This document shows, piece by piece, positions 25,441 through 60,923 of a stretch of DNA of 64,000 bases. The notes under the pieces are model-generated. The model worked only from the letters and a program-made list of their open reading frames with translations, was not told the DNA's origin and searched no databases. Each line of letters opens with the position of its first letter. Positions within the stretch are counted from its first letter, which is position 1. A program made the position numbers and the translations under genes. Source of the DNA: Anolis carolinensis (lineage: Eukaryota); contig NC_085842.1 in the NCBI RefSeq assembly GCF_035594765.1, positions 132,693,036-132,757,035 of the forward strand, written 5' to 3'.

Positions 25441-28400
25441 CCACAAAAGATCTTCATATTTGTTGGGTTAAAATGTAGAAAACCTACATTTGTCTACAGT
25501 GGTGGGACTGCCTGAGAGGTACTTTTGTACCTGGCAGCACTGGTGGGATTGGCTGATTGGAGAACCCAAGGGTTGATGGGAGAAACATTGGGAAAACTCC
25601 ACATCCCATACCTCACCCACATGCTGGTGCTTTTTAAAATGAAGTGCCCCTCCCCATTGCACCAGAACACAAGTATACACAGGCAGGAATGAGATTGGGT
25701 CTTTCTGGCTTTGGTTTGATCCCCTTGTTGCAAAGCAAAAATTAATGAAGGAACTGGGAAAGCATTGAGTGAAAGTGTTCCTATCAGGTCTGGAAGTACC
25801 GCTATCTAATTTACTCCTAGAAACAGCAGCAGGGCCAGAGGACCCCATAACAAAATCTATCTATCACTGTCACAACACAGCTAGAACTTCTGCTGCACAG
25901 AATTACACAATCCTTGTTCCGGGAGACCTTTCTGTCCTGCTCAAAATCTTCTCTGCTACTGCTTGGCTAGAAGCCCAGCATCTGCCAATAGTGACAGAGT
26001 TCAAATTACCTGAAAAGAGATTGGCAGAGGTCCAGCTGGAGATTCAATAGATGGCAATGCACATCTTTTGCAACCTTATCCCAAGTTTCTCCAACTAAGT
26101 TTGGTGGGTTTCAGTCAGAGAGCTAATTTACTATTCTGGCTAAAACTGAATTAACAATCAGATAGTTTCCTCCATCACAAACCCTGCTATAACTATAGGC
26201 ATTGTTATTCTATCCATATCCGATAAAATATGTACTCCTGAGGCACTTCCTAGGTCCTCCTGAATGACTCTAGGATACTAGGATATTTTTGGGCCAGGTC
26301 TCCATTTAAACAGGGTTCACTATTATCCATGGTTCTGCATGTCCATGGGAAGTCCAGGAATATATTTTCTCCAGAACATATCCTTCCATGCTCTATAAGT
26401 CTGGTGGTACTATCACAGTCCACCATATAGTAGAGATAGGTACAAATATAATAACAAAATTGGGAACCTTTCTAATAGTAATTGCCTCAGTTTAGGACTT
26501 ACGTCGCTCAACTTGGAGTTTATTGGTGTTATACATCTACTTCCTCCAAATATGGGATAATGAAGTGCACAGGTCGTCTTCCTAACTAGGCACCTTGTGC
26601 ACATTTAAAATTAGGAAGACAATATTCAAAAAGTAGGAAATCACCTCAGATGAACCTTCTGTTTACAACAATGAGTGTTTCCAGATGGATGGTTACTAGA
26701 AGTACAAATCAAAATAAAATGTAGGTTTTATTTCACCTTTTCTTCCTTTATAGTTTGTCTCTTCTTTATGTGTATGTGGGGGAAAAATTGACAGAAAGTA
26801 GTAAGAAAACCTGCAAGGGTTTCAAGTGGAAGATGTCACCTGGTCCCCATGTAAAATTCTGTTTATGAGGCAAGTCAGTTACACAATGAAAACCACAACT
26901 AGCAGCACCCAAGGGTTTTATTATGGATCGGTTTTGCATATCCCACAAGCACCCTAAAATAGCTTCTTTCACTTCAGAAAGTGACACATGCATACCTCCT
27001 TCCCAACCTTCCTTTCCTTTGGCACAAGCAGAATATTGATTCCTGGCAACTCCTGCATATCTGACGTGGGAAAATTAAAGGGAACAAGAGAGCTGTCACT
27101 TGGATGAAGGGCAAATTCAGCTCCACCATAGGTAAAGATGTTGAATAATTCAGTCTCTACAGCCCCGACATTGCCATGGGGAACAATCAGAACAGCAGCA
27201 TGCTCTACTCTGCTGAAGTGCAAAGCTTCTTGGTTTCACATGTCAGCCTTTGTGCTGGTTCCACATCTCTGATTCTAGTTAAAACTTCTCTAGCATAACC
27301 AGCGGCACCATTCAAAGGCCTCAGTTGGGGTAGCACTTTGGAGAATTGCTCATCCATAAGTGAAAATGACTTGTTTATTAAGAGTTAATTGTCATCTTAC
27401 ATGGAAAATGACATCAGCACTCCCTACTTTTTCCAGATTGTCCTGAGATGCTAATGATAAGAGGTGGCACAGTAGGTTATACCCTTGTGCTGGATGAACT
27501 GATGACTTCAAGGACTTTTTAAATCAAATACATTGAGCCCATTTTGAACCAACAGGGTTTAAGGAAAGGTATGGAAATGCAAAAATGGAGGAGCCCAAGT
27601 AGAAGTGAAGAGTAAAAGAAGAAGGAAAGGAATGAGCAAACCCAGTATTCCTTGCCTACTAAAACCTTATAAAATTTATTGTGTCTCTATAAGTTGATAG
27701 GCAACTTGAAGGTGTACACCCACATACATACACAAACATACACTCAAGCCTTGAAAAATTACTTTTTGGACTACATCTCCCATAATACCCAACATATTAG
27801 CTGATTAATTCTGGGAGATGAAGTATAAAAGTAACACTTCTATGTTTTGAAAAAGATGGACTTCACAAGAGAAAGAAAACCATAAATGATGCTATTGCAA
27901 ATTATCTTTTCCTGTCTCCACAGAAAGACAGTCACTGGGCTCCTCACTGGGGTTCTGTATCAGCTATGATTAATCTTTTAGTACTGCAGAGACAAAAAGT
28001 ATTCCCTAGCTCTATGCTTTAAAGTTGTGTGTTCTTTAAATTCTATAAACCAAACAGGTTCTACAAAATATGTTTTTAAATTATACTCACATTAAGCCAA
28101 TTTATTTACATCTATTTTGTCAGAATAATTATATTAATAAAATATTCTTATTGTGAATCTGGGTAGTTTCATAGAAGATTCTGAACAGATATAATACAAA
28201 AAAGAAGTACTGTCACATCAGGAAAATAATGCAGTAGGTACAGGTCTTTAAGGGTGCAATTACTGACCCAAAGTATGTGATAACTGCCCTTTCATTTTCA
28301 GTTTTCCCTTCCTAATTTATGGGAAGAAACTGCTCTTTAATTTAGAAATGGGGAAGAAAGTCAAGATTCTATTATACATTACCAGATATTGCCTTATACC

Positions 28401-50785: not shown

Positions 50786-52675
50786 TGTAAAGAAGTGTGT
50801 GATTTTATTTTGTTTATGGATAACATGTGTGAAGAAGTGTATAATTGTATTTTGTTTATAGATGATATGTGTATTTGATTTTGTTTATACAGCCAGGTTT
50901 GGCTAAGTTAAAGTGGTGAGTATTTGAATTGACATTATGTATGGGGGAAGGTAGCCATCTTAGAGTGCTAGAGCAGGTTACCATAGCAACAGGGGCGGAG
51001 CCAACCGCCGCCTGGAAAGGAAAAGGGAGAATATTTTAAAACCCAAGGACAGTCTGTGATTTTCTAGTCACAGGGAAGGATCTGATTCTTGTGTGGAGAA
51101 TCAGGCTGGCTTAAATAGGAAGATTTGAGTCAGATTTAGGTTGGACCAGACTAGGCAAGTTAGGTGATTTGTCTAGGGTCTTTTATAGAGCCTGTGGATT
51201 AGGGAGAATTAATCCCAGGGGATCCAGTAGGATCAGGGTTTAGTGTAACTTAAAGAAAGAAGTATTTTTGAAAGTTTAACCACCTTATAACCGTTTGTAA
51301 CCATTAAGCGAAGTGCCTTTACTAAGTTATCTGAAACCATCAAGCTCTGTACCTGCAATAAACTTGTTTTGATTTTATTCAAATCAAGCCTCTGTCATAC
51401 TCTTATATTAAGTTAAGTAACATCAACACCTGAAGTGGAACAAATAGAGAAAGCTTATAAGAACCAGTACCATCTGCCTGACGTCTCCATTGGTGGCAGC
51501 GAAGAAGATAATCAAACAAATCATTAATTAACATCATCTCTCACAAAACATCTTTATTAAGTGGTGGTATCTGTGTGTGTGTGTGTGGGATTAAAAAGGG
51601 TTCCATCTCTGACACACATTCCTGTCAGACACCTCACCTCTGTACATATTGGTGGCTAAGCTGAGGGGATTCTAAAAGGGATTCCATTCCTCTGTCACCC
51701 TCAGTTCTCTACATAAATTGGTGGCAGCGAGGGGATTTCAAAGAGGGATTCCATTCCCTGTCACCTCAGCTCCTTACATTAATTGGTGGCAGCGGTGGGA
51801 TTTCAAAGAGGGATTCCATTCCCTGTCACCTCAGCTCCTTACAACATGTTTATTTGATTTTTGTTTAAACAGTCAGGTTTAGTTAAGTTTAAAATGGTAA
51901 GTATTGGAGCTGATAATGCCAGAGGGTGACCAGCTCAGCATTATGAGACAGGTTGCCATGACAACGGGGGCGGAGCCAACCGCCGTTTGGAAAGGAAACC
52001 AGGGAAGTTTAAATCTCAGTCTGTGATTTTTAGTCACAGGGAACAGACTGGTTCCAAGTATAAGGAAACCAGGGAGGCAGACCTCTCATAGGCCAGACTA
52101 AGCAAGTTGGGTGACTTGTTTAGGGTCATTTGTAGAGGCTGTGGATTAAGGGAAATTAATCCCAGTGGATCTAAGAGATCAGTTCTAGTTTAGTTTGGAG
52201 AGAAGGAAATATTTTGAAAGTTAGAACACCTCATATCTATTTGTAACCGTTAATCTAAGTCCCTTTAAGAAGTTATAGAAACCACTAAGCTCTGTATACG
52301 AAATAAACTTGTTTTGATTTTTAATCCATCTAAGTCTCTGTCACACTCCTATTCTAAGTTAAGCAACATCACCATCTGAAGTAAATAAAGAAGGCTTAAA
52401 AAGAATAAGTATCCTCTGCCTGACACCTCCTCTATTGGTGGCAGCGAAGATAATTAAATACATAATAATATAATTAAAATCATCATCATCCAGACACCTT
52501 TATAATTGGTGGTAACTGTGTGGTGGGATAAAAAGATTCCATCCCTGCCTCAGTCCATTACAAATTGGTGGCAGCGGTGGGATCAAAAGGGATTCCTCCC
52601 TGTCACAGTTCATTACAAATTGGTGGCAGCGGTGGGATCAAAAAGATTCCTTCCCTGTCACCTCACACCTTTACA
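50786..52675 (+). mobile_element. Solo LTR A (Gypsy-like), split by nested LTR B
   Basis: TGTAAAG...CTTTACA termini; 5-bp TSD GAGTG (50781-85, 52676-80); AATAAA at ~52303. Confidence 0.88.
50828..51843 (+). mobile_element. Solo LTR B, related family, nested in LTR A
   Basis: TGTGAAG...CCTTACA termini; 5-bp TSD ACATG (50823-27, 51844-48); colinear similarity to LTR A; AATAAA at ~51357. Confidence 0.88.
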
Positions 52676-54711: not shown

Positions 54712-54845
54712 TAGTGTTTCCCAAATTTTGTTTTTCCAGGTGTTTTGACTTCTGTTCCAGAATTCCTGATCAATGGCCAAGGCAGCTGAGGCTTCTGGGA
54801 GTTGGAGTCCAAAATACCTGGAGAACTGGAGTTTGGGAATCACTA
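54712..54845. mobile_element. hAT/Charlie-like MITE with TTCTGGGAGTTG core
   Basis: TAGTGTTTCCCAAA...TTTGGGAATCACTA inverted ends; TSD not clearly preserved. Confidence 0.55.
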
Positions 54846-55238
54846 CTTTAAAGCAAGGTCAGAGAAGTTTTTGGGCCATAGCTCTCACAATACTTTACTT
54901 CTGGTTGTGTTAGGTGAGATTGATAAGAGTTGTTGAGCAAAACTGTTCTTGGGCCAAATTAAAGGTTTTCTCCTCTTGAGAGATCTCCAGCACTCCCCAC
55001 TCTCCCCGCAAAGGACTATGGAAACACAACCAAACCTCCCAGGCTGGATGCTCTGTCCATTTAGGATAGACAGGTCTTCAGGCAGAGCAGAGTCTTCCCC
55101 ACCATCTATAGAAGATGCTATATAGACTGAACTTGGGACCTTCTGAAAGCTCAGCAGGTGCTTTACAAGAGAGCTGTGCTCCTTTTCTTCCCTCAAGACA
55201 TAGCCAGTTTCTCTTCCCCTTTTCTAGGCTGGGCTCAC

Positions 55239-55407
55239 CTCTTGTCTACTGAGTTCTCTTTTCCCTGGTAGCAGCTTCTCAGCAGTTTTCCATTGCTGGC
55301 ATTAAACATGTAGTTCCGCAAGAAGTCAGCTGTGTTCACAGCCCGGTCAACATACTCCTTCTTACCCAAGATGGCTCCACTCTGAGCAAAGCCAGAGATC
55401 ATCAACC
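55239..55407 (-). CDS. SPATA20: SPATA20 coding exon: (G)LMISGFAQSGAILGKKEYVDRAVNTADFLRNYMFNASNGKLLRSCYQGKENSVDK
   Basis: 169 nt, tag acceptor and gtgagc donor, phase 1/2; translated by hand, in frame with both neighbours. Confidence 0.93.
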
Positions 55408-56320
55408 CTAGGAGACAAGGAGAAAGCTAGAGTCCCCAACAGGGCTCAACTGGAGTTTACAGCTGCAAAATATTCTGTGAGAAGCTCCTAGTAATCAGCA
55501 AAACACAGGGCAGGGGCCACTTAGAGATCCTAACTATCTCATTGACCCAAGTTCCTTTCCTGTTGAGATAGCTGCTCACAGAGGAACTTTCCAAATTTAC
55601 TCATGGTTCAGTTGAATACAGGAGACAGGCTATGATTGTGAAGCAGTAGCATTTATCATATCTAGGTAAGGATAACTTACTGGTGTGTACAATTCAAACA
55701 TTTTACCTTTCACCAAAGATAAACAATCAACAATCAAAAGTCTTCATGATTTGCAATGCTATTTACTCCCACTGTGTTTTGAGAAGAAAGAATATCCATG
55801 AATTCTGGAACCCCATGCTGCAGGCAGTCTCAAAACCAGCATCCATGTCTACCACTTTTTCCATTATTAGGCATCTCCATTTCAGCATGAACAAGAATGT
55901 GCCCCCTGCCCCTTTATATATTGTGAAAATATGCGCAAGGGCTACATGGGTGAACAAAGAGACTTTCTAAAACTCCTGTGAAGAAAACAGGAGAAAGCTG
56001 CTGCTGCTCCCTGCTGGCGAGATGAAAGAAAGCATTTTGCTCTCATGCTGCCATCAGGGGAAAGAAAAATATACCAGGGACAGAGAAACAAGGAAAAATA
56101 ATTTTTCACCACATCAGACACTTTACCTCCAATATCAGAGAGGTAGATCTAATGGGATGTTATTAAGCTTACATAGAGTATATACCGTAACTTGGCAGAT
56201 CGCTGTATTACGGCAAAATGAACAGCCAAGACATTTTGCCATTTCCCCGTGCCCTCCCGATGTGCACAAACATTTGTGTCCCTGAGCTCAGTGCTGGAGA
56301 ACCCACAAGGGGAGGCTCAC

Positions 56321-56513
56321 CATTCCAGGAGGCCAGCATCTTGGTGTCCAGATGGGGCCGGGGCCGCTGGGCCCGTGCCTTATACAGCTGATCTCTGCTT
56401 TTGACAAGCATTGTCTTCAGCTGCTCCAGCCCCAGTCCAAAACGGGCAGCTGTAAGTTCCAGGGAATACTGCACAATCAGGACATTTTTGCCTTTCAGCT
56501 CATTGTGAGGGTC
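56321..56513 (-). CDS. SPATA20: SPATA20 coding exon: DPHNELKGKNVL...RPRPHLDTKMLASWN(G)
   Basis: 193 nt, cag acceptor and gtgagc donor, phase 0/1; RP.PHLD.KML..WNG motif. Confidence 0.95.
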
Positions 56514-57529
56514 CTGAAACCAAAAGCCAACAAAAAGAATAAGCACTTTCTAAGTCAGACTCATGCTGTCATCCTTCTAAGGCCTCAAATACACACACAC
56601 CCCATTACTGGGATTATTTTTAATTTCCTGATATTCAACCCAATACTAAGACAATCTCTATAATGGGGTGCTGTTCTGCTTCCCTGTTATACATATTTTA
56701 GAAGAAAGGAGGCCACTACACACAAAGACAGAGGGAATACAGGGAGAAATTAAGTGGCTTTAGTGCTGAAGGTGGGGATTAAAAGATTGATTCTATACCA
56801 GAGGTTGTTTCTGCACTAGACATTGATGTCACTCATGCTGCACAATATTGCCATGGTTGCATTGCAAGAAAATGATTCCTCGGGGCCCATAAAAAGTGAC
56901 TCTCTCTCTCTCTTCTGAAGACCAAATTATCTGAGAAGCTGTTTACAATTGCTTTGGGGGATACCCAGTAACTGATCTACTTCTGAAGTCAAGTCTCTGC
57001 TGATGAGCAGTCAGCATTGTTTGGAACAAGCCATCCCTCCCACCAACCAGAGATCAGCTCTGGCTAACACAAAGATCACTGCACCGGCCTGTCATGGTGG
57101 TGTACTCAAAGTCTTTCTTTCAAACGTCCTTCCCAGACTGGTGCACAACAAATGCACTCTTCTCAATGATTCATTGTGCAGGTTCAAGGCATATTCTCAG
57201 AAATAAATGCTCCTAACTGGTGGACATCATATCCTCCCATCAATCAAGCAAAAAAAAAAAATATTGCTGAAAAAATATGGTTCCTGCTCAGCTGACTAGT
57301 CGATGGTCAATACACCCTACACTTTCCACACCTGCCCTTTGGCCTTAAACATTTGCAACTTTCATTCTCATACAAGAACACTCAACTGCTCGTATAGAAG
57401 AAGTGGCCATCCAAAAACATTAGCAGAATGAGAATATGCTTCTGTGACATAGCTATCACCTGCAATCGGATGTCATTAGCACTTGCAGTATTTGCAAGAA
57501 GTACATACAATATTTTAAAGCCTCAATAC

Positions 57530-57740
57530 TTTGTAGGAACCAGAATTTGCATGCTAAGCTAAGCACAGTCAGGCCTGGTTAATACTTGGGTGGGAGATCA
57601 CCAAGGAATACACACTGCCAGAGGTTATATTTCAGAGATAGATAACAACAAATCACCTGTGAGTATTCCATGCCAGAAAAAGCTCTATGTAATTTATGGA
57701 GTGTCGTAAGTCAACAACTCAAGCATCCACACACATACAC
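57530..57740 (+). mobile_element. 5S rRNA-derived SINE (5S-Sauria-like)
   Basis: AAGCTAAGCA..GTCAGGCCTGGTTAATACTTGGGTGGGAGATCACC is a degenerate 5S internal control region, followed by a SINE body and a (CA)-rich tail. Confidence 0.7.
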
Positions 57741-58481
57741 ACCCACCTACATATGGAAACAGACGGGTCACATAGTTGGCATACAAGCCATATATCTCAC
57801 CATATGGGACAGAAAAAGATGTGGACAAAATAGTAGAATCAGGAGAAATGTTAAGGGCAAGACAATGAAAATGGGATAAGAGCAAGCAAAAGAATCAAAA
57901 TGTAGATTCTAGATATAACCAATGAGCTCCAGCCAGGACCTGTTGAGAAGCCTCTTCCTGCTTTCTTTTCTATCTGCTGTTGGGAGTTTGGGGCCAAAGA
58001 AGCTCTAGGCATACCCACATAGTACAGGATGAATTGAATGCAAGTACTGATAAATATATGTAATTATCTGTTATAATTACAAATGATTCTTTGTTTGAAA
58101 TGATGCTATTTTACCGTATTTCCAGTGTATGATATACCGTATTTTTCGCTTTATAAGACACACTTTCCCCCCCCCCCAAAATAGAGGGGAAAAGTCAGTG
58201 CGTCTTATAAACGCAATATGACCTCACGATGACGTCATGCAGTCGCCCAGGCAGACACGCCTCCAGGCGTTCCCACGAGCCCTGCGCTCAAGCCAGCTTT
58301 AAGGCCTGCCTCCCATTACATTTTCCCTCCGGAAATGTGAGGGGAAGCCTTGAAAAGCCCACTTCCACGCAGCCGGCGCTCCTCATACCCCCTCATGGAG
58401 ACATATTTGCATGTGAATGTCTGAATAAATGCCCGAAAGGTGTTCTTTCGAGGGCTGTCCCGTTCTCCCCCGGGTCCTCAC

Positions 58482-58569
58482 CATCCTGAGGGTCGTCTTC
58501 GGGGTCCTGCGAGGCGCCGGGAAGCGGGTTCAGGAGCCGCTCCAGCTCCTCCGCCAAGGGCGCCGCCAT
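58482..58569 (-). pseudogene. AATF: Captured copy of AATF first coding exon: MAAPLAEELERLLNPLPGASQDPEDDPQD + phase-1 GTGAGG donor
   Basis: Peptide resembles the AATF/Che-1 N-terminus (human [31 protein letters not shown], recalled) and ends at a phase-1 donor after the DPExDP motif; no further AATF exons seen in the window. Confidence 0.8.
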
Positions 58570-58765
58570 CTTCCCTGGCCTGGCTTCTCTTCCACCTCGA
58601 CGGCTGCGAGACTTCATTTCCCAGAAGCCCTCATCATTGCAGAGCGCAGCCGAGGCTTCTGGGAGTTGAAGTTCGCGTGCTCTGAGGTGAGCCAATGAGG
58701 AGAGAGAGCCGTTGTGAAACTGGGGAGGGGGGGAGAAGGGTAAGGCACAGTATAGGGGCAATCCT
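58560..58765 (-). promoter_or_regulatory. CpG-rich housekeeping-type promoter fragment upstream of the captured AATF exon
   Basis: YY1 motif AAGATGGCGGC over the ATG; two inverted ZNF143/SBS-like motifs (ACTTCATTTCCCAGAAGCC ~58611, TTCTGGGAGTTGAAGTTC ~58657); CCAAT at ~58692; CpG density far above the flanks. Confidence 0.65.
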
Positions 58766-59746
58766 AATGCTGCTGTTGACTGTTTGGTAATGTCTACATA
58801 CTACATGTTATTTTATTAAAATGTTCTAGGTCATCTTTTAGTTCAAATTATTTTTCCCCATTTTCCTCCTCTGAAAACTAGGTGCGTCTTATCATCTGGT
58901 GCGTCTTATAAAGCAAAAAATACGGTAACTGGAAACACCACAAAATGTTTTTAAATGGGTAAGATGTGTGAGAGGCAGAGAGGAAGAATTACTTGAAATG
59001 GGCAAGTAATGTTGCATTTTCCTTGGTGATTTTCAAGCTTCTGAGTCATGCCATATCTTCTGATTGTTGTTATCAGTGAGCAGAATGTGGCTAAGTAGAA
59101 AGCTGGAAAGAGACTTTGAATTCTAGGGATCAAACTAGACAATACATTTAACTTTTTTTGAATAAATTCTCACTGAAATGGTGAAAGTCATTTTTTTATC
59201 ACAGCATGTACTTTCCTCACCTATAGCTATTGTTTTTAGTGTGTTTTGGTTAGTGATTAGTTGTAGAAAGTAAATATGGAATGTATACATCTAATTGATG
59301 AGACAATATTCCTGAGGAAATCCCATTGTGGGATGTATACAACTCCATGTGTCTGTGTAGTAAGGGATGAGTAGAACTCTGTTTCTCTGGGAGAGAGTGT
59401 GGCTTGCCATGTGCTTCCCTAAAATCACATGTTCCTCAGCAACATGTAGCATTTATTCCCTTTGATGTTGGTGGCCAGGTGGTTTTTTTTAACTGACACA
59501 GAGTTCAAGAGGATCAAACTGTTCCACACCCCTCTGCCATCTAATTCAGAAGTCTCAATAGCACTTTCTCTGATTGGTCATCTTCCTCAACAACTGCTCA
59601 GCTTGCAAGCAGGTAGATTGCTTTTTCTCCCATAAGAACTGTTCTGACATGGATTAGGACAACCCAATTCCAAATCCCAAATTAGGAATTATTAGGCCCA
59701 TGTCCCACCCAGGCCACCCCTGGCTGCATCTTCCTGCCAACAGCAC

Positions 59747-59959
59747 CTTCATTGGGTTCACATTGCCATCTTCTTTAACCCCATAGTGGTGCATAAAGAC
59801 ATCTGCCACGCTCTTTCTCTCAGGGCTCCCTTCAATGAGGTCTGGCAGGAGGTGCCTGATTTCCTCGGCTGTCCACACACAGAATGCCCCTTCTTGCTTC
59901 TTCTCTGATTTGGCAGTGGGGTAGGAATCTGCATCTTCTGCACTGTAGAATCCCCCAGA
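59747..59959 (-). CDS. SPATA20: SPATA20 coding exon: SGGFYSAEDADS...EGAFCVWTAEEI...HYGVKEDGNVNPMK
   Basis: 213 nt, tag acceptor and gtgctg donor; conserved GGFYSAEDADS motif. Confidence 0.95.
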
Positions 59960-60923
59960 CTAGAAACAAAATCAGCACCATTAATGTACACCTTATCTGA
60001 AGTACATGCACCAGTCCATTCCTCCAACACAGAGACATCATTGACAAGGCAGCCAGGAAAATCTTGCTCCAAAACATTTAGGAAGTCTGGACATATGCAT
60101 GGTCATTCATGGTCATGGGATGTGGCTTGGCAATTTACATCCCAAAGTGTTTGCTTTGATTGAATGAGTTTGTCCCAGAGAACCAATGCTTAAGCTTCAG
60201 GAGCAATGCTTAAGCTTCAAGAGCCTTAGAGGTATCCAAGGAAAATTTGGAAATGTTGGCTCAGAACCATGATTATTAGAACATGCTGCAATCAAAGGAG
60301 CAATGAGGGAAACCTCCAGTAAAAGAAAGGAGTTCTGCATTTCATATGATTCAAATAAGCCTCCACACCACCTGAAAGAATCACAACCCATTTTGGAGGC
60401 AGTTAGCTTCTAATCCATTATTAATTTTTATGGCACATGTTAATGACATTCTGAAAGACGCTGAGAGATGATCTGATGTGGTAACTCAAATACAGTGGCA
60501 AATCGACATAATACTATGTATACTCAAGCACAGGTCTAGAAATTTTAGACAAAAATAAACTACAAAATCCTCCATCAATTTATTCATGGGTTAATTTAAA
60601 CACTTTATGTTTAATTGTTACAAAAATAGAAACCACCCCTTTCTCTAAGTAGAATGAAGAACTCTAAAACATCAGTGTATTTCACAGCTAACCCAAGTTG
60701 CTTTCTCTAGAACTGGCCTAAACAACTTGCAGCCTATATCAAGTAAAACATGCCTGAGAAGAATAAGCTCTGTATTTCTTTTAGGGAAGGATGCACTAGG
60801 ACTATATTATTTCCAGCCCATGATGCTGGAACCTAGGGCCAGAATTAAAAACTGAGATGGATGCTGGTGGCCACCAAACAGCTTCTAAAGGTCATAAGAG
60901 AAAACCCTGAGATGGTAGCTCAC

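What the first reader, a model, noticed from the sequence alone, without database searches (positions are those of the whole stretch)
58137..58925. DNA transposon that captured the promoter, exon 1 and splice donor of AATF (Pack-TIR) inside a SPATA20 intron
Seen: a complete 789-bp element with 27-bp CCGTA-type TIRs and TA flanks. Its ~550-bp interior is GC/CpG-rich and encodes MAAPLAEELERLLNPLPGASQDPEDDPQD followed directly by a GTGAGG donor. Known (recalled): this resembles the AATF N-terminus and its phase-1 exon-1 boundary, and AATF is not a neighbour of SPATA20 in human. Inference: upstream promoter and intron sequence are both retained, so the capture was at DNA level (transduplication) rather than by retroposition. 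Such capture is well known for plant Pack-MULEs and seldom documented in amniotes. A mobile promoter-ATG-donor cassette could act as a portable gene trap if it amplified.
Basis: partly seen in the sequence, partly recalled or inferred. Interest (0 to 1): 0.9.

Follow-up and report, generated by a model that had tools for sequence, protein, structure and literature searches.

The report
Lizard transposon carrying a gene's start
A small cut-and-paste transposon in an intron of a lizard gene really does carry a DNA copy of the promoter region, first coding exon and splice donor of another host gene (very probably AATF), and exists at more than one locus; this kind of capture is known but rare in vertebrates, and this copy looks silenced and decaying.

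Summary
At 58137-58925 there is a 789-bp element with 27-bp (29 with TA) terminal inverted repeats and TA on both sides. It lies in a phase-0 intron of a minus-strand gene that reads as SPATA20.

The 544-587-bp core is 60% G+C with CpG o/e 0.68, against 0-0.18 in the flanks. On the minus strand it carries ATG, 29 codons and G|GTGAGG.

- **A real host exon.** Another species holds the same exon and donor without the repeats. An RNA-like contig of this species joins the exon, exactly at 58482, to codons reading ATAARVVDRF.
- **The name AATF.** It rests on my memory of the human protein; no tool could test it.
- **More than one copy.** Public contigs show a second locus with a different flank, structural variants, and core depth about 8 times single copy.
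- **State of this copy.** Five of its six private differences are CpG decay. Its donor is out of frame with the next host exon.

This is a new, multicopy member of the known Pack-TIR kind. The published survey found none in anole. This scan has noted sibling cases in this genome (MAGI3 exon 1; several Helitron captures).

The parts
58135..58136 (.). left TA (target-site duplication of a TA-inserting element)
   Evidence: read directly; TA also at the right end
58137..58163 (+). left terminal inverted repeat (CCGTATTTTTCGCTTTATAAGACACAC)
   Evidence: 93% complementary to the right repeat; none in shuffles
58137..58217 (.). left backbone arm of the non-autonomous element, with a subterminal inverted repeat at 58150-58164 / 58197-58211
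   Evidence: pair I3; contigs of other family members match up to 58217 and then diverge (loose end 'behind' 58217); summed depth in this bin is about 240 times single copy
58218..58804 (-). captured host DNA (cargo). The left edge is about 58218. The right edge lies between 58762 and 58805
   Evidence: loose ends at 58217, 58762 and 58805; composition (60% G+C, CpG o/e 0.68)
58218..58481 (-). intron-1-derived segment beyond the donor. It holds a TGACGTCA site at 58229-58236. Relative to most copies it lacks 16 nt after 58255
   Evidence: table 4: contigs of X1 and X20 carry a 16-nt insertion behind 58255
58476..58481 (-). splice donor GTGAGG (phase 1: the exon ends ...CAG GAT G)
   Evidence: The donor is conserved in L001. 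An X17 contig leaves the stretch exactly at 58482 (table 7)
58482..58569 (-). first coding exon: ATG + 29 codons + 1 base (MAAPLAEELERLLNPLPGASQDPEDDPQD)
   Evidence: 87% identical over 30 aa to P0001 of another species, E 4e-7
58570..58804 (-). 5' UTR and promoter-like upstream sequence. It holds an inverted CCAAT at 58693-58697 and two inverted ACTxCAxxTCCCAGAAGCC motifs at 58611-58629 and 58654-58676
   Evidence: (pair I2). Motif names come from general knowledge; activity was not tested
58805..58925 (.). right backbone arm, with GTGCGTCTTAT repeated at 58874-58886 and 58891-58905
   Evidence: loose ends 'before' 58805; summed depth about 350 times single copy
58899..58925 (-). right terminal inverted repeat
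58926..58927 (.). right TA
59747..59959 (-). host exon upstream of the insertion (SGGFYSAEDAD...NVNPMK), phases 0-0
56321..56513 (-). next host exon downstream (DPHNELKGKNVL...SWN-G). Its acceptor is phase 0 and it ends in phase 1
55239..55407 (-). second host exon downstream (G-LMISGFAQSG...), acceptor phase 1

Best explanation
This is a non-autonomous cut-and-paste DNA transposon that inserts at TA, of the IS630-Tc1-mariner/pogo type. Its family was not determined. Its interior has been replaced or filled by about 550-590 bp of host DNA. That DNA comprises about 235 bp of upstream and 5' UTR sequence, the first coding exon (29 codons), the splice donor and about 264 bp of intron 1 of a conserved housekeeping-type gene, very probably AATF.

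The capture happened at the DNA level, as in a Pack-TIR (transduplication), most likely by template switching or gap repair during replication or repair of a transposon copy. That step is inferred. The chimera was then mobilised in trans by a transposase encoded elsewhere. It now sits at two or more loci, and probably at about 5-7.

The copy in the window landed in a phase-0 intron of SPATA20, in the same orientation as the host gene. It is young: 1.4% from the majority sequence. It has already lost CpGs by methylation-type decay and 16 nt of the intron-derived part. Its phase-1 donor would put the next SPATA20 exon out of frame. It is therefore most likely an inert, silenced passenger rather than a working alternative promoter.
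For: **Shown**
- TIRs, TA flanks and a GC/CpG-rich core.
- ATG, 29 codons and a GT donor.
- The same exon, with the same start and the same G|GTGAGGA donor, lies on contig L001 of another species. It has no TIRs there, the flanks cannot be aligned, and many of the exon's differences are synonymous third-position changes.
- In run X17 a contig matches the exon down to 58482. It then continues for 255 or more letters whose first 30 read, on the minus strand...GAT G|CC ACC GCA GCC CGA GTT GTT GAC AGA TTT = ATAARVVDRF (table 7). A parental gene therefore uses this exon and this donor.
- Single-copy contigs of X1 run from both flanks across the TA into the TIRs, without a branch for an empty site (records 1 and 8, depths 11.2 and 10.5).
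- Another X1 contig (record 2, 804 nt) has 692 nt of unrelated flank, then the left arm starting at 58135, then cargo from 58272 with 50 nt missing. This is a second locus, and similarity begins at the TA.
- Junction contigs between backbone and cargo (58191-58301, 58685-58791) have depths of 44 and 42. The core contig 58272-58714 has depth 85.6, against 11 for single copy (table 8).
- Five of the six positions where the window differs from that majority contig are CpG>TpG or CpG>CpA in the window (P = 4e-4).
- Intron phases were read.

**Literature**
- Pack-TIRs are a described class. Multicopy ones capture GC-rich 5' regions (PMC8277862).
- Anole non-autonomous transposons often incorporate extraneous DNA, and the genome has 17 non-autonomous TA-TSD families (PMC3014272).

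**Recalled, not tested**
- Human AATF begins ...[34 protein letters not shown]. This matches both the exon and the exon-2 start.
Against: - The parental locus was not retrieved. The capture breakpoints, the contiguity of the cargo and the direction of copying are therefore inferred.
- phmmer/hmmsearch against PDB sequences, which I believe (not checked) include human AATF, gave no match at E <= 10.
- Copy number rests on k-mer depth of Logan contigs in a run only guessed to be DNA. The tool itself warns against reading depth as copy number.
- No contig spans the whole element. The window's own variant of the cargo was not seen in X1, so independent reads do not prove that the cargo lies between these TIRs at this locus.
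- TA flanks are uninformative as a duplication.
- X17 record 13 (7-nt indel next to the ATG, E7Q) could be either the parent gene or another expressed copy.
Confidence: 0.8

Rival explanations
1. The same structure, but the captured gene is not AATF. It is another gene with an acidic N-terminus.
For: No tool named the gene. The PDB searches were blank, the word-index protein search was blank and the paper search was blank. The only sequence hit is an unnamed 84-aa ORF.
Against: Two separate stretches agree with the human AATF N-terminus as I recall it: LE.LLNP.P...DPE.DP in exon 1, and 9 of 10 residues of [10 protein letters not shown] at the start of exon 2. The exon boundary falls at the same place.
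Confidence: 0.07
2. This copy is a working mobile promoter and first exon. It drives transcripts from inside the SPATA20 intron. These could be chimeric, if exon B is skipped and the donor joins the exon at 55407 (which is in frame), or antisense from a bidirectional CpG island.
For: - The cassette has the same orientation as the host gene, a good donor, and CCAAT and ACTxCA...CCCAGAA motifs.
- 33 CpGs are retained.
- The donor phase matches the acceptor at 55407.
- In X17 the unique right flank 58885-59299 is covered while the rest of the intron is not.
Against: - The nearest acceptor (56513) is phase 0, which gives G-P-S-Q-stop.
- No joint from 58482 to any host exon appears in four runs (table 5). 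This is a weak negative, because these are contigs and conserved exons may be filtered out.
- Five of six private changes are CpG decay, which implies germline methylation.
Confidence: 0.1
3. The chimera arose in place by transposition-independent gap filling of a pre-existing transposon. The other copies are segmental duplications, not transpositions.
For: Tan et al. found that most animal Pack-TIRs are single-copy gap-filling products. SPATA20 and AATF share a chromosome in human (recalled), so the parent could be linked.
Against: Record 2 of X1 shows an unrelated flank that stops matching exactly at the TA next to the TIR. There are several structural variants, and junction depths are about 4 times single copy.
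Confidence: 0.05
4. The direction is reversed: the host gene's first exon was born from this transposon family.
For: Part of the upstream region (58610-58672) resembles a high-copy repeat that is also present at 54747-54808.
Against: The exon is conserved, with the same donor, in a species where the flanks cannot be aligned and no TIRs are present. By recollection, it is also conserved in human.
Confidence: 0.02
5. It is an assembly artefact: a collapsed or chimeric join of a MITE and a CpG island.
For: No public contig spans the element, and the window's exact core variant is absent from X1.
Against: - Sixteen runs from several of the 8 holding studies hold half or more of the words, up to 79%.
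- Flank-to-TIR contigs exist on both sides.
- Backbone-to-cargo junction contigs exist in X1, X17 and X20.
- At 789 bp, the element is shorter than a single long read.
Confidence: 0.02

Closest known systems
Pack-TIRs of animals (Tan et al. 2021, Nat Commun 12:4280; PMC8277862). An example is Pack-hAT-N8_XT of Xenopus tropicalis, which carries 291 bp of the CAPSL 5' UTR on three chromosomes
   Same: A TIR transposon with host gene DNA between its ends. The cargo is a GC-rich 5' region. It is multicopy with distinct flanks, and the parent gene is elsewhere.
   Different: - The carrier is a TA-inserting Tc1/mariner-pogo type element, not hAT.
- The cargo is a whole promoter-ATG-donor unit plus intron sequence.
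- The host is a squamate. That survey found 0 Pack-TIRs in anoCar2 and only 4 multicopy cases in 100 genomes.
Pack-MULEs / Pack-CACTA of plants
   Same: Transduplication of gene fragments, including introns, between TIRs. There is a preference for GC-rich 5' ends, and the elements are amplified by trans-acting transposase.
   Different: The transposon superfamily and the kingdom differ. Plants have thousands of such elements, whereas here there are a handful of copies.
The pogo (Passer)-type element with MAGI3 exon 1, noted earlier by this scan in the same genome (s1-535983)
   Same: Same genome, a TA-type cut-and-paste carrier, a first coding exon as cargo, multicopy, and decaying.
   Different: The captured gene is different. 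I could not compare the TIRs, so whether it is the same transposon family is unknown.
Non-autonomous TcMar-N families of Anolis carolinensis (Novick et al. 2011; PMC3014272)
   Same: TA target duplication, short TIRs, no transposase, hundreds or more copies of the backbone, and known incorporation of extraneous DNA.
   Different: That paper reports TE-derived filler DNA, not a host promoter and first exon. I could not determine which TcMar-N family this backbone belongs to, because no repeat library is on hand.
Helitron gene captures
   Same: DNA-level capture of promoters and first exons in a vertebrate, with a potential for chimeric transcripts.
   Different: Helitrons use a rolling-circle mechanism and have no TIRs or TA duplication. 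This element has both.

Membership tests
Pack-TIR (transduplicating TIR transposon) | Terminal inverted repeats of a repeated TIR-transposon family at both ends | tested here: met
   29-nt repeats, 93% complementary. Hundreds-fold contig depth on both arms, and many contigs with other flanks.
Pack-TIR (transduplicating TIR transposon) | Target-site duplication flanking the element | tested here: met
   TA on both sides. This is weak evidence on its own, since every insertion of this type has TA.
Pack-TIR (transduplicating TIR transposon) | The internal sequence is a copy of host genic DNA whose parental locus is not associated with the transposon | tested here: inconclusive
   The exon is used by a spliced transcript that continues into a further coding exon (loose end at 58482). 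It is a TIR-less host exon in another species. The parental locus of this genome itself was not retrieved.
Pack-TIR (transduplicating TIR transposon) | Multicopy class: copies at different loci with distinct flanks | tested here: met
   X1 record 2 has 692 nt of unrelated flank, then the TIR from 58135, then cargo. Variants with a 16-nt insertion and a 50-nt deletion exist. Junction contig depth is about 4 times and core depth about 8 times single copy. The number of loci is an estimate.
IS630-Tc1-mariner / pogo non-autonomous element | TA target duplication and short TIRs | tested here: met
IS630-Tc1-mariner / pogo non-autonomous element | TIRs matching those of an autonomous element with a DD34-37E/D transposase | not testable with these tools
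   There is no transposase in the window and no repeat library. The Passer paper prints no TIR sequence in its main text.
AATF / Che-1 (source of the cargo) | N-terminal exon orthologous to AATF exon 1 and spliced to AATF exon 2 | not testable with these tools
   PDB searches were blank. The word-index search could not reach full-length proteins and was blank. The exhaustive search found only an unnamed ORF. The match to the human N-terminus and to [10 protein letters not shown] is recalled, not computed.
AATF / Che-1 (source of the cargo) | Pfam domains AATF-Che1 and TRAUB | not testable with these tools
   Those domains lie in later exons, which the cargo does not contain.
SPATA20 (host gene) | Exons encoding the thioredoxin-like plus six-hairpin protein | tested here: inconclusive
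   Minus-strand exons read like SPATA20 by recollection. Pfam and PDB were blank for single exons. The atlas feature search gave 'thioredoxin domain-containing protein (fragment)' and six-hairpin families at 0.88-0.91, which is a lead only.

The most novel reading that the evidence does not exclude
The anole genome holds a recently active TA-inserting transposon system that repeatedly picks up CpG-island promoters with their first exon and donor. The cases so far are AATF here, MAGI3, and a 'housekeeping-type promoter' noted elsewhere by this scan. The system spreads them as portable promoter-ATG-donor cassettes. Some of these are transcribed and splice into host genes, making a natural vertebrate gene-trap or exon-shuffling system with a mechanistic bias toward open, GC-rich 5' ends.
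Probability: 0.15. Interest if true: 0.7.

Novelty: new member of a known kind. Interest (0 to 1): 0.5.

Why it matters
Capture and spread of host gene pieces by cut-and-paste transposons drives exon shuffling in plants. It has barely been seen to be mobile in vertebrates: 4 multicopy cases in a survey of 100 animal genomes, and none in anole.

This case is young and multicopy, and it carries a complete promoter, start codon and splice donor. It gives a tractable system for three questions:
- How such captures arise, through breakpoints and microhomology at the parent locus.
- Whether the host silences them.
- Whether any copy creates chimeric transcripts.

There is also a practical consequence. 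Copies like this can mislead gene annotation with false first exons, and RNA-seq quantification of the parent gene.

Tried and rejected
- **PDB, single peptide.** phmmer of the 58-aa ORF against PDB sequences gave only a chance hit at E 1.8 and no AATF.
- **PDB, profile.** A two-sequence profile of the exon gave nothing. HMMER's filters drop matches above about E 2, so this does not argue against AATF.
- **Word-index protein search.** The 135-aa open frame gave 79 candidates and none scored. The search did not even return P0001, so the index seems not to cover these Logan ORFs.
- **Paper search.** Three short peptide strings (two recalled from human AATF, one read) gave 0 papers.
- **Pfam and PDB on SPATA20 exon pieces.** All blank.
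- **Rfam and tRNA scan of the element.** Only sub-threshold hairpin-type miRNA matches on the palindromic arms, and no tRNA. I rejected these as chance.
- **The search of earlier findings by sequence.** Blank.
- **Chimeric transcript with SPATA20.** No joint was seen, and the cassette is out of frame with the nearest exon. This is reported only as a weak negative.
- **Joined models.** I did not build or search a joined (spliced) model. The junction codons were read by eye.

Full report
**1. What is in the sequence**

The stretch 58137-58925 is bounded by inverted repeats at 58135-58163 and 58899-58927. They are 29 nt including the TA, 27 nt from CCGTA, and 93% complementary. The 25-nt terminal pattern occurs exactly twice in the 64-kb window, in opposite orientation. 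It did not occur in any of 100 dinucleotide shuffles. TA stands on both sides, at 58135-58136 and 58926-58927.

The arms are AT-rich and carry subterminal repeats of GTGCGTCTTAT. The interior 58218-58761 is 60% G+C with CpG o/e 0.68 and 33 CpGs. The surrounding intron has CpG o/e 0.18 and 0.00.

On the minus strand, an ATG at 58569 opens MAAPLAEELERLLNPLPGASQDPEDDPQD. The last exon base is G at 58482, and GTGAGG follows.

**2. Host context**

Minus-strand open frames at 59747-59959, 56321-56513, 55239-55407, 49732-50028 and 46622-46888 read like consecutive exons of SPATA20. This is by my recollection of the human protein.
- Pfam and PDB gave nothing for single exons.
- The atlas feature search gave 'thioredoxin domain-containing protein (fragment)' and six-hairpin families at 0.88-0.91. 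That is a lead, not a proof.

The element lies in the 3.2-kb intron between 59746 and 56514, in the same orientation as the gene. I did not test that, because run and organism names are coded.

**3. Is the core a host exon?**

An exhaustive phmmer search of 1.84 billion representatives with the 30-residue peptide gave one hit, P0001 (84 aa, 87% identical over residues 1-30, E 4e-7). Its contig L001 is 1750 nt, from a Logan assembly of another run.
- L001 has the same ATG and the same G|GTGAGGA donor at the same codon position.
- Many of the exon's differences are synonymous third-position changes.
- The upstream and downstream flanks cannot be aligned, and there are no TIRs.

So the exon is an old, constrained host exon, not a transposon invention.

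In this species, laying contigs of four runs on 55200-60100 showed a contig in X17 that matches the exon down to exactly 58482. It then runs on for 255 or more unlike letters. The first 30 of those letters, read on the minus strand in the exon's frame, give ...Q D | A T A A R V V D R F. A parental gene therefore splices this exon, at this donor, to a further coding exon.

As I recall it, human AATF starts ...[34 protein letters not shown].... Both the exon and the start of exon 2 agree with that. This is recollection. Nothing here could compute it: the PDB searches, the word-index search and the paper search were all blank. I put AATF at about 0.9.

**4. Capture at the DNA level**

The cargo keeps about 235 bp upstream of the ATG. 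This includes an inverted CCAAT at 58693-58697 and two inverted ACTxCAxxTCCCAGAAGCC motifs, which resemble ZNF143/'ACTAYRNNNCCCR' promoter sites (from knowledge, not tested). It also keeps 264 bp beyond the donor, so it is not a retrocopy.

Boundaries come from where contigs of other family members stop matching (table 7):
- 'Behind' 58217 on the left.
- 'Before' 58805 on the right, with a further branch at 58762.

The parent locus was not available, so contiguity and microhomology at the breakpoints remain untested.

**5. It is more than one copy (run X1, guessed DNA)**

- Single-copy contigs come in from both flanks, cross the TA and end inside the TIRs (record 1, 55200-58159, depth 11.2; record 8, 58899-60100, depth 10.5). 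There is no branch for an empty site.
- Record 2 (804 nt) has 692 nt of unrelated sequence, then the left arm starting at 58135, then cargo from 58272 with 50 nt missing. This is a second locus whose similarity starts at the TA, as transposition predicts.
- Junction contigs that link backbone to cargo have depths 44.4 (58191-58301, with a 16-nt insertion after 58255 that the window copy lacks) and 41.7 (58685-58791).
- The core contig 58272-58714 has depth 85.6, about 8 times single copy.

Taken together, I estimate about 5-7 Pack copies plus the parent. The tool warns that depth is no copy number, so only 'two or more loci, several structural variants' is firm.

The backbone alone is far more abundant, with summed depths 240-350 times single copy.

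Sixteen runs, from several of the 8 studies that hold the stretch, hold half or more of its words.

**6. State of this copy**

The window differs from the majority core contig at six positions in 443 (1.4%). Five of them are CpG>TpG or CpG>CpA in the window (58295, 58351, 58412, 58594, 58688). Given that 15% of the bases lie in CpGs, P = 4e-4. That is the signature of germline methylation, so this copy is probably silenced, although it is too young to have lost its island character.

The host intron is phase 0 and the cassette's donor is phase 1.
- Spliced to the next exon (56513), the reading would be G-P-S-Q-stop.
- Only skipping that exon and joining 55407 would be in frame. This qualifies the scan's other note, s1-590258.

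No joint from 58482 to a host exon was seen in any of the four runs. With contigs, and with possible filtering of conserved exons, that is a weak negative.

One loose thread remains. In X17 the unique right flank 58885-59299 is covered while the rest of the intron is not. This could be read-out from the cassette on the plus strand, or simply sparse pre-mRNA.

**7. Which contig is the parent?**

X17 record 13 (58482-58791) carries a 7-nt indel directly 5' of the ATG, which leaves GCC ATG G. It also carries 58551 C>G (E7Q), 58602 G>A, 58722 G>A and a 1-nt indel. It may be the parental AATF 5' end, about 1% from the Pack majority, which would make the capture very recent. It may instead be another expressed copy. 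I cannot tell which.

**8. Comparison with what is known**

Tan et al. 2021 (PMC8277862) defined animal Pack-TIRs.
- They found 370 in 100 genomes. Only four are multicopy: three in Xenopus tropicalis and one in alligator.
- Their table lists 0 for anoCar2, from only 77 TIR elements screened.

Novick et al. 2011 (PMC3014272) describe 17 non-autonomous TA-TSD families in anole and frequent incorporation of extraneous DNA, but not host first exons.

Passer/pogo elements have TA duplications and TIRs under 30 bp, and occur in Squamata. That is compatible with this element, but I could not compare TIR sequences.

This scan has already noted sibling captures in the same genome: MAGI3 exon 1 in a pogo-type element, several Helitron captures, and one 'housekeeping-type promoter' cassette.

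**9. Verdict**

The element is a new, multicopy member of a known kind, with three qualifications:
- The gene names are recalled, not computed.
- The phenomenon is documented in animals, although it is rare as a mobile family.
- This particular copy looks methylated, slightly deleted and out of frame with its host. It is a passenger rather than a working gene trap.

Noticed in passing
window 58112-58121: TACCGTATTT, the first 10 letters of TA plus the TIR, recurs 23 nt upstream of the element in the same orientation. It may be a remnant of an older copy or a footprint, or it may be chance (roughly 2e-4 for a 10-mer within 100 nt).
   Followed up: no
window 58610-58672 and 54747-54808 (also 27808-27824): A palindromic unit of about 63 nt, built on CTTCTGGGAGTTGnAGT (like a ZNF143/ACTAYRNNNCCCR promoter motif), is shared by the cargo's upstream region and another intron of the host gene. 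The two are 78% identical. Many high-depth contigs match it. So it is a repeat family of this genome that carries a promoter-type motif, and the parent gene's promoter may contain a copy.
   Followed up: partly
window 57556-57611: A short high-copy repeat in the intron. Summed contig depth is about 50 times single copy in X1, and dozens of contigs diverge at 57556 and at 57597-57611. It was not classified.
   Followed up: no
window 58885-59299: In the RNA-like run X17, only the element and about 370 nt of unique intron to its right are covered (record 16, depth 4.5). The remaining 3 kb or more of intron is not covered. This could be plus-strand read-out from the cassette, or sparse pre-mRNA.
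   Followed up: no
window 57254: A length polymorphism of an A-run. Contigs of X1 and X18 carry 11-12 extra letters (A10-11CC) behind 57254 (table 4).
   Followed up: no
window 58341-58452: An X17 contig skips 110 nt of the intron-derived part, without splice-site ends (table 5). This is a deletion variant, either of another copy or of the parental intron.
   Followed up: no
L001 1-1750: A contig of another species holds the orthologous first exon. The region upstream of the ATG contains a tandem 'tagtactctttag' repeat and a GC-rich promoter that cannot be aligned to the anole cargo. The species is not known.
   Followed up: partly
window 51480-52675: Tandem 55-nt units with TGGTGGCAGCGGTGGGATC-like ends (family D1) lie in the region that another note of the scan calls tRNA-Leu primer-binding-site arrays in solo LTRs. 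I did not examine them.
   Followed up: no
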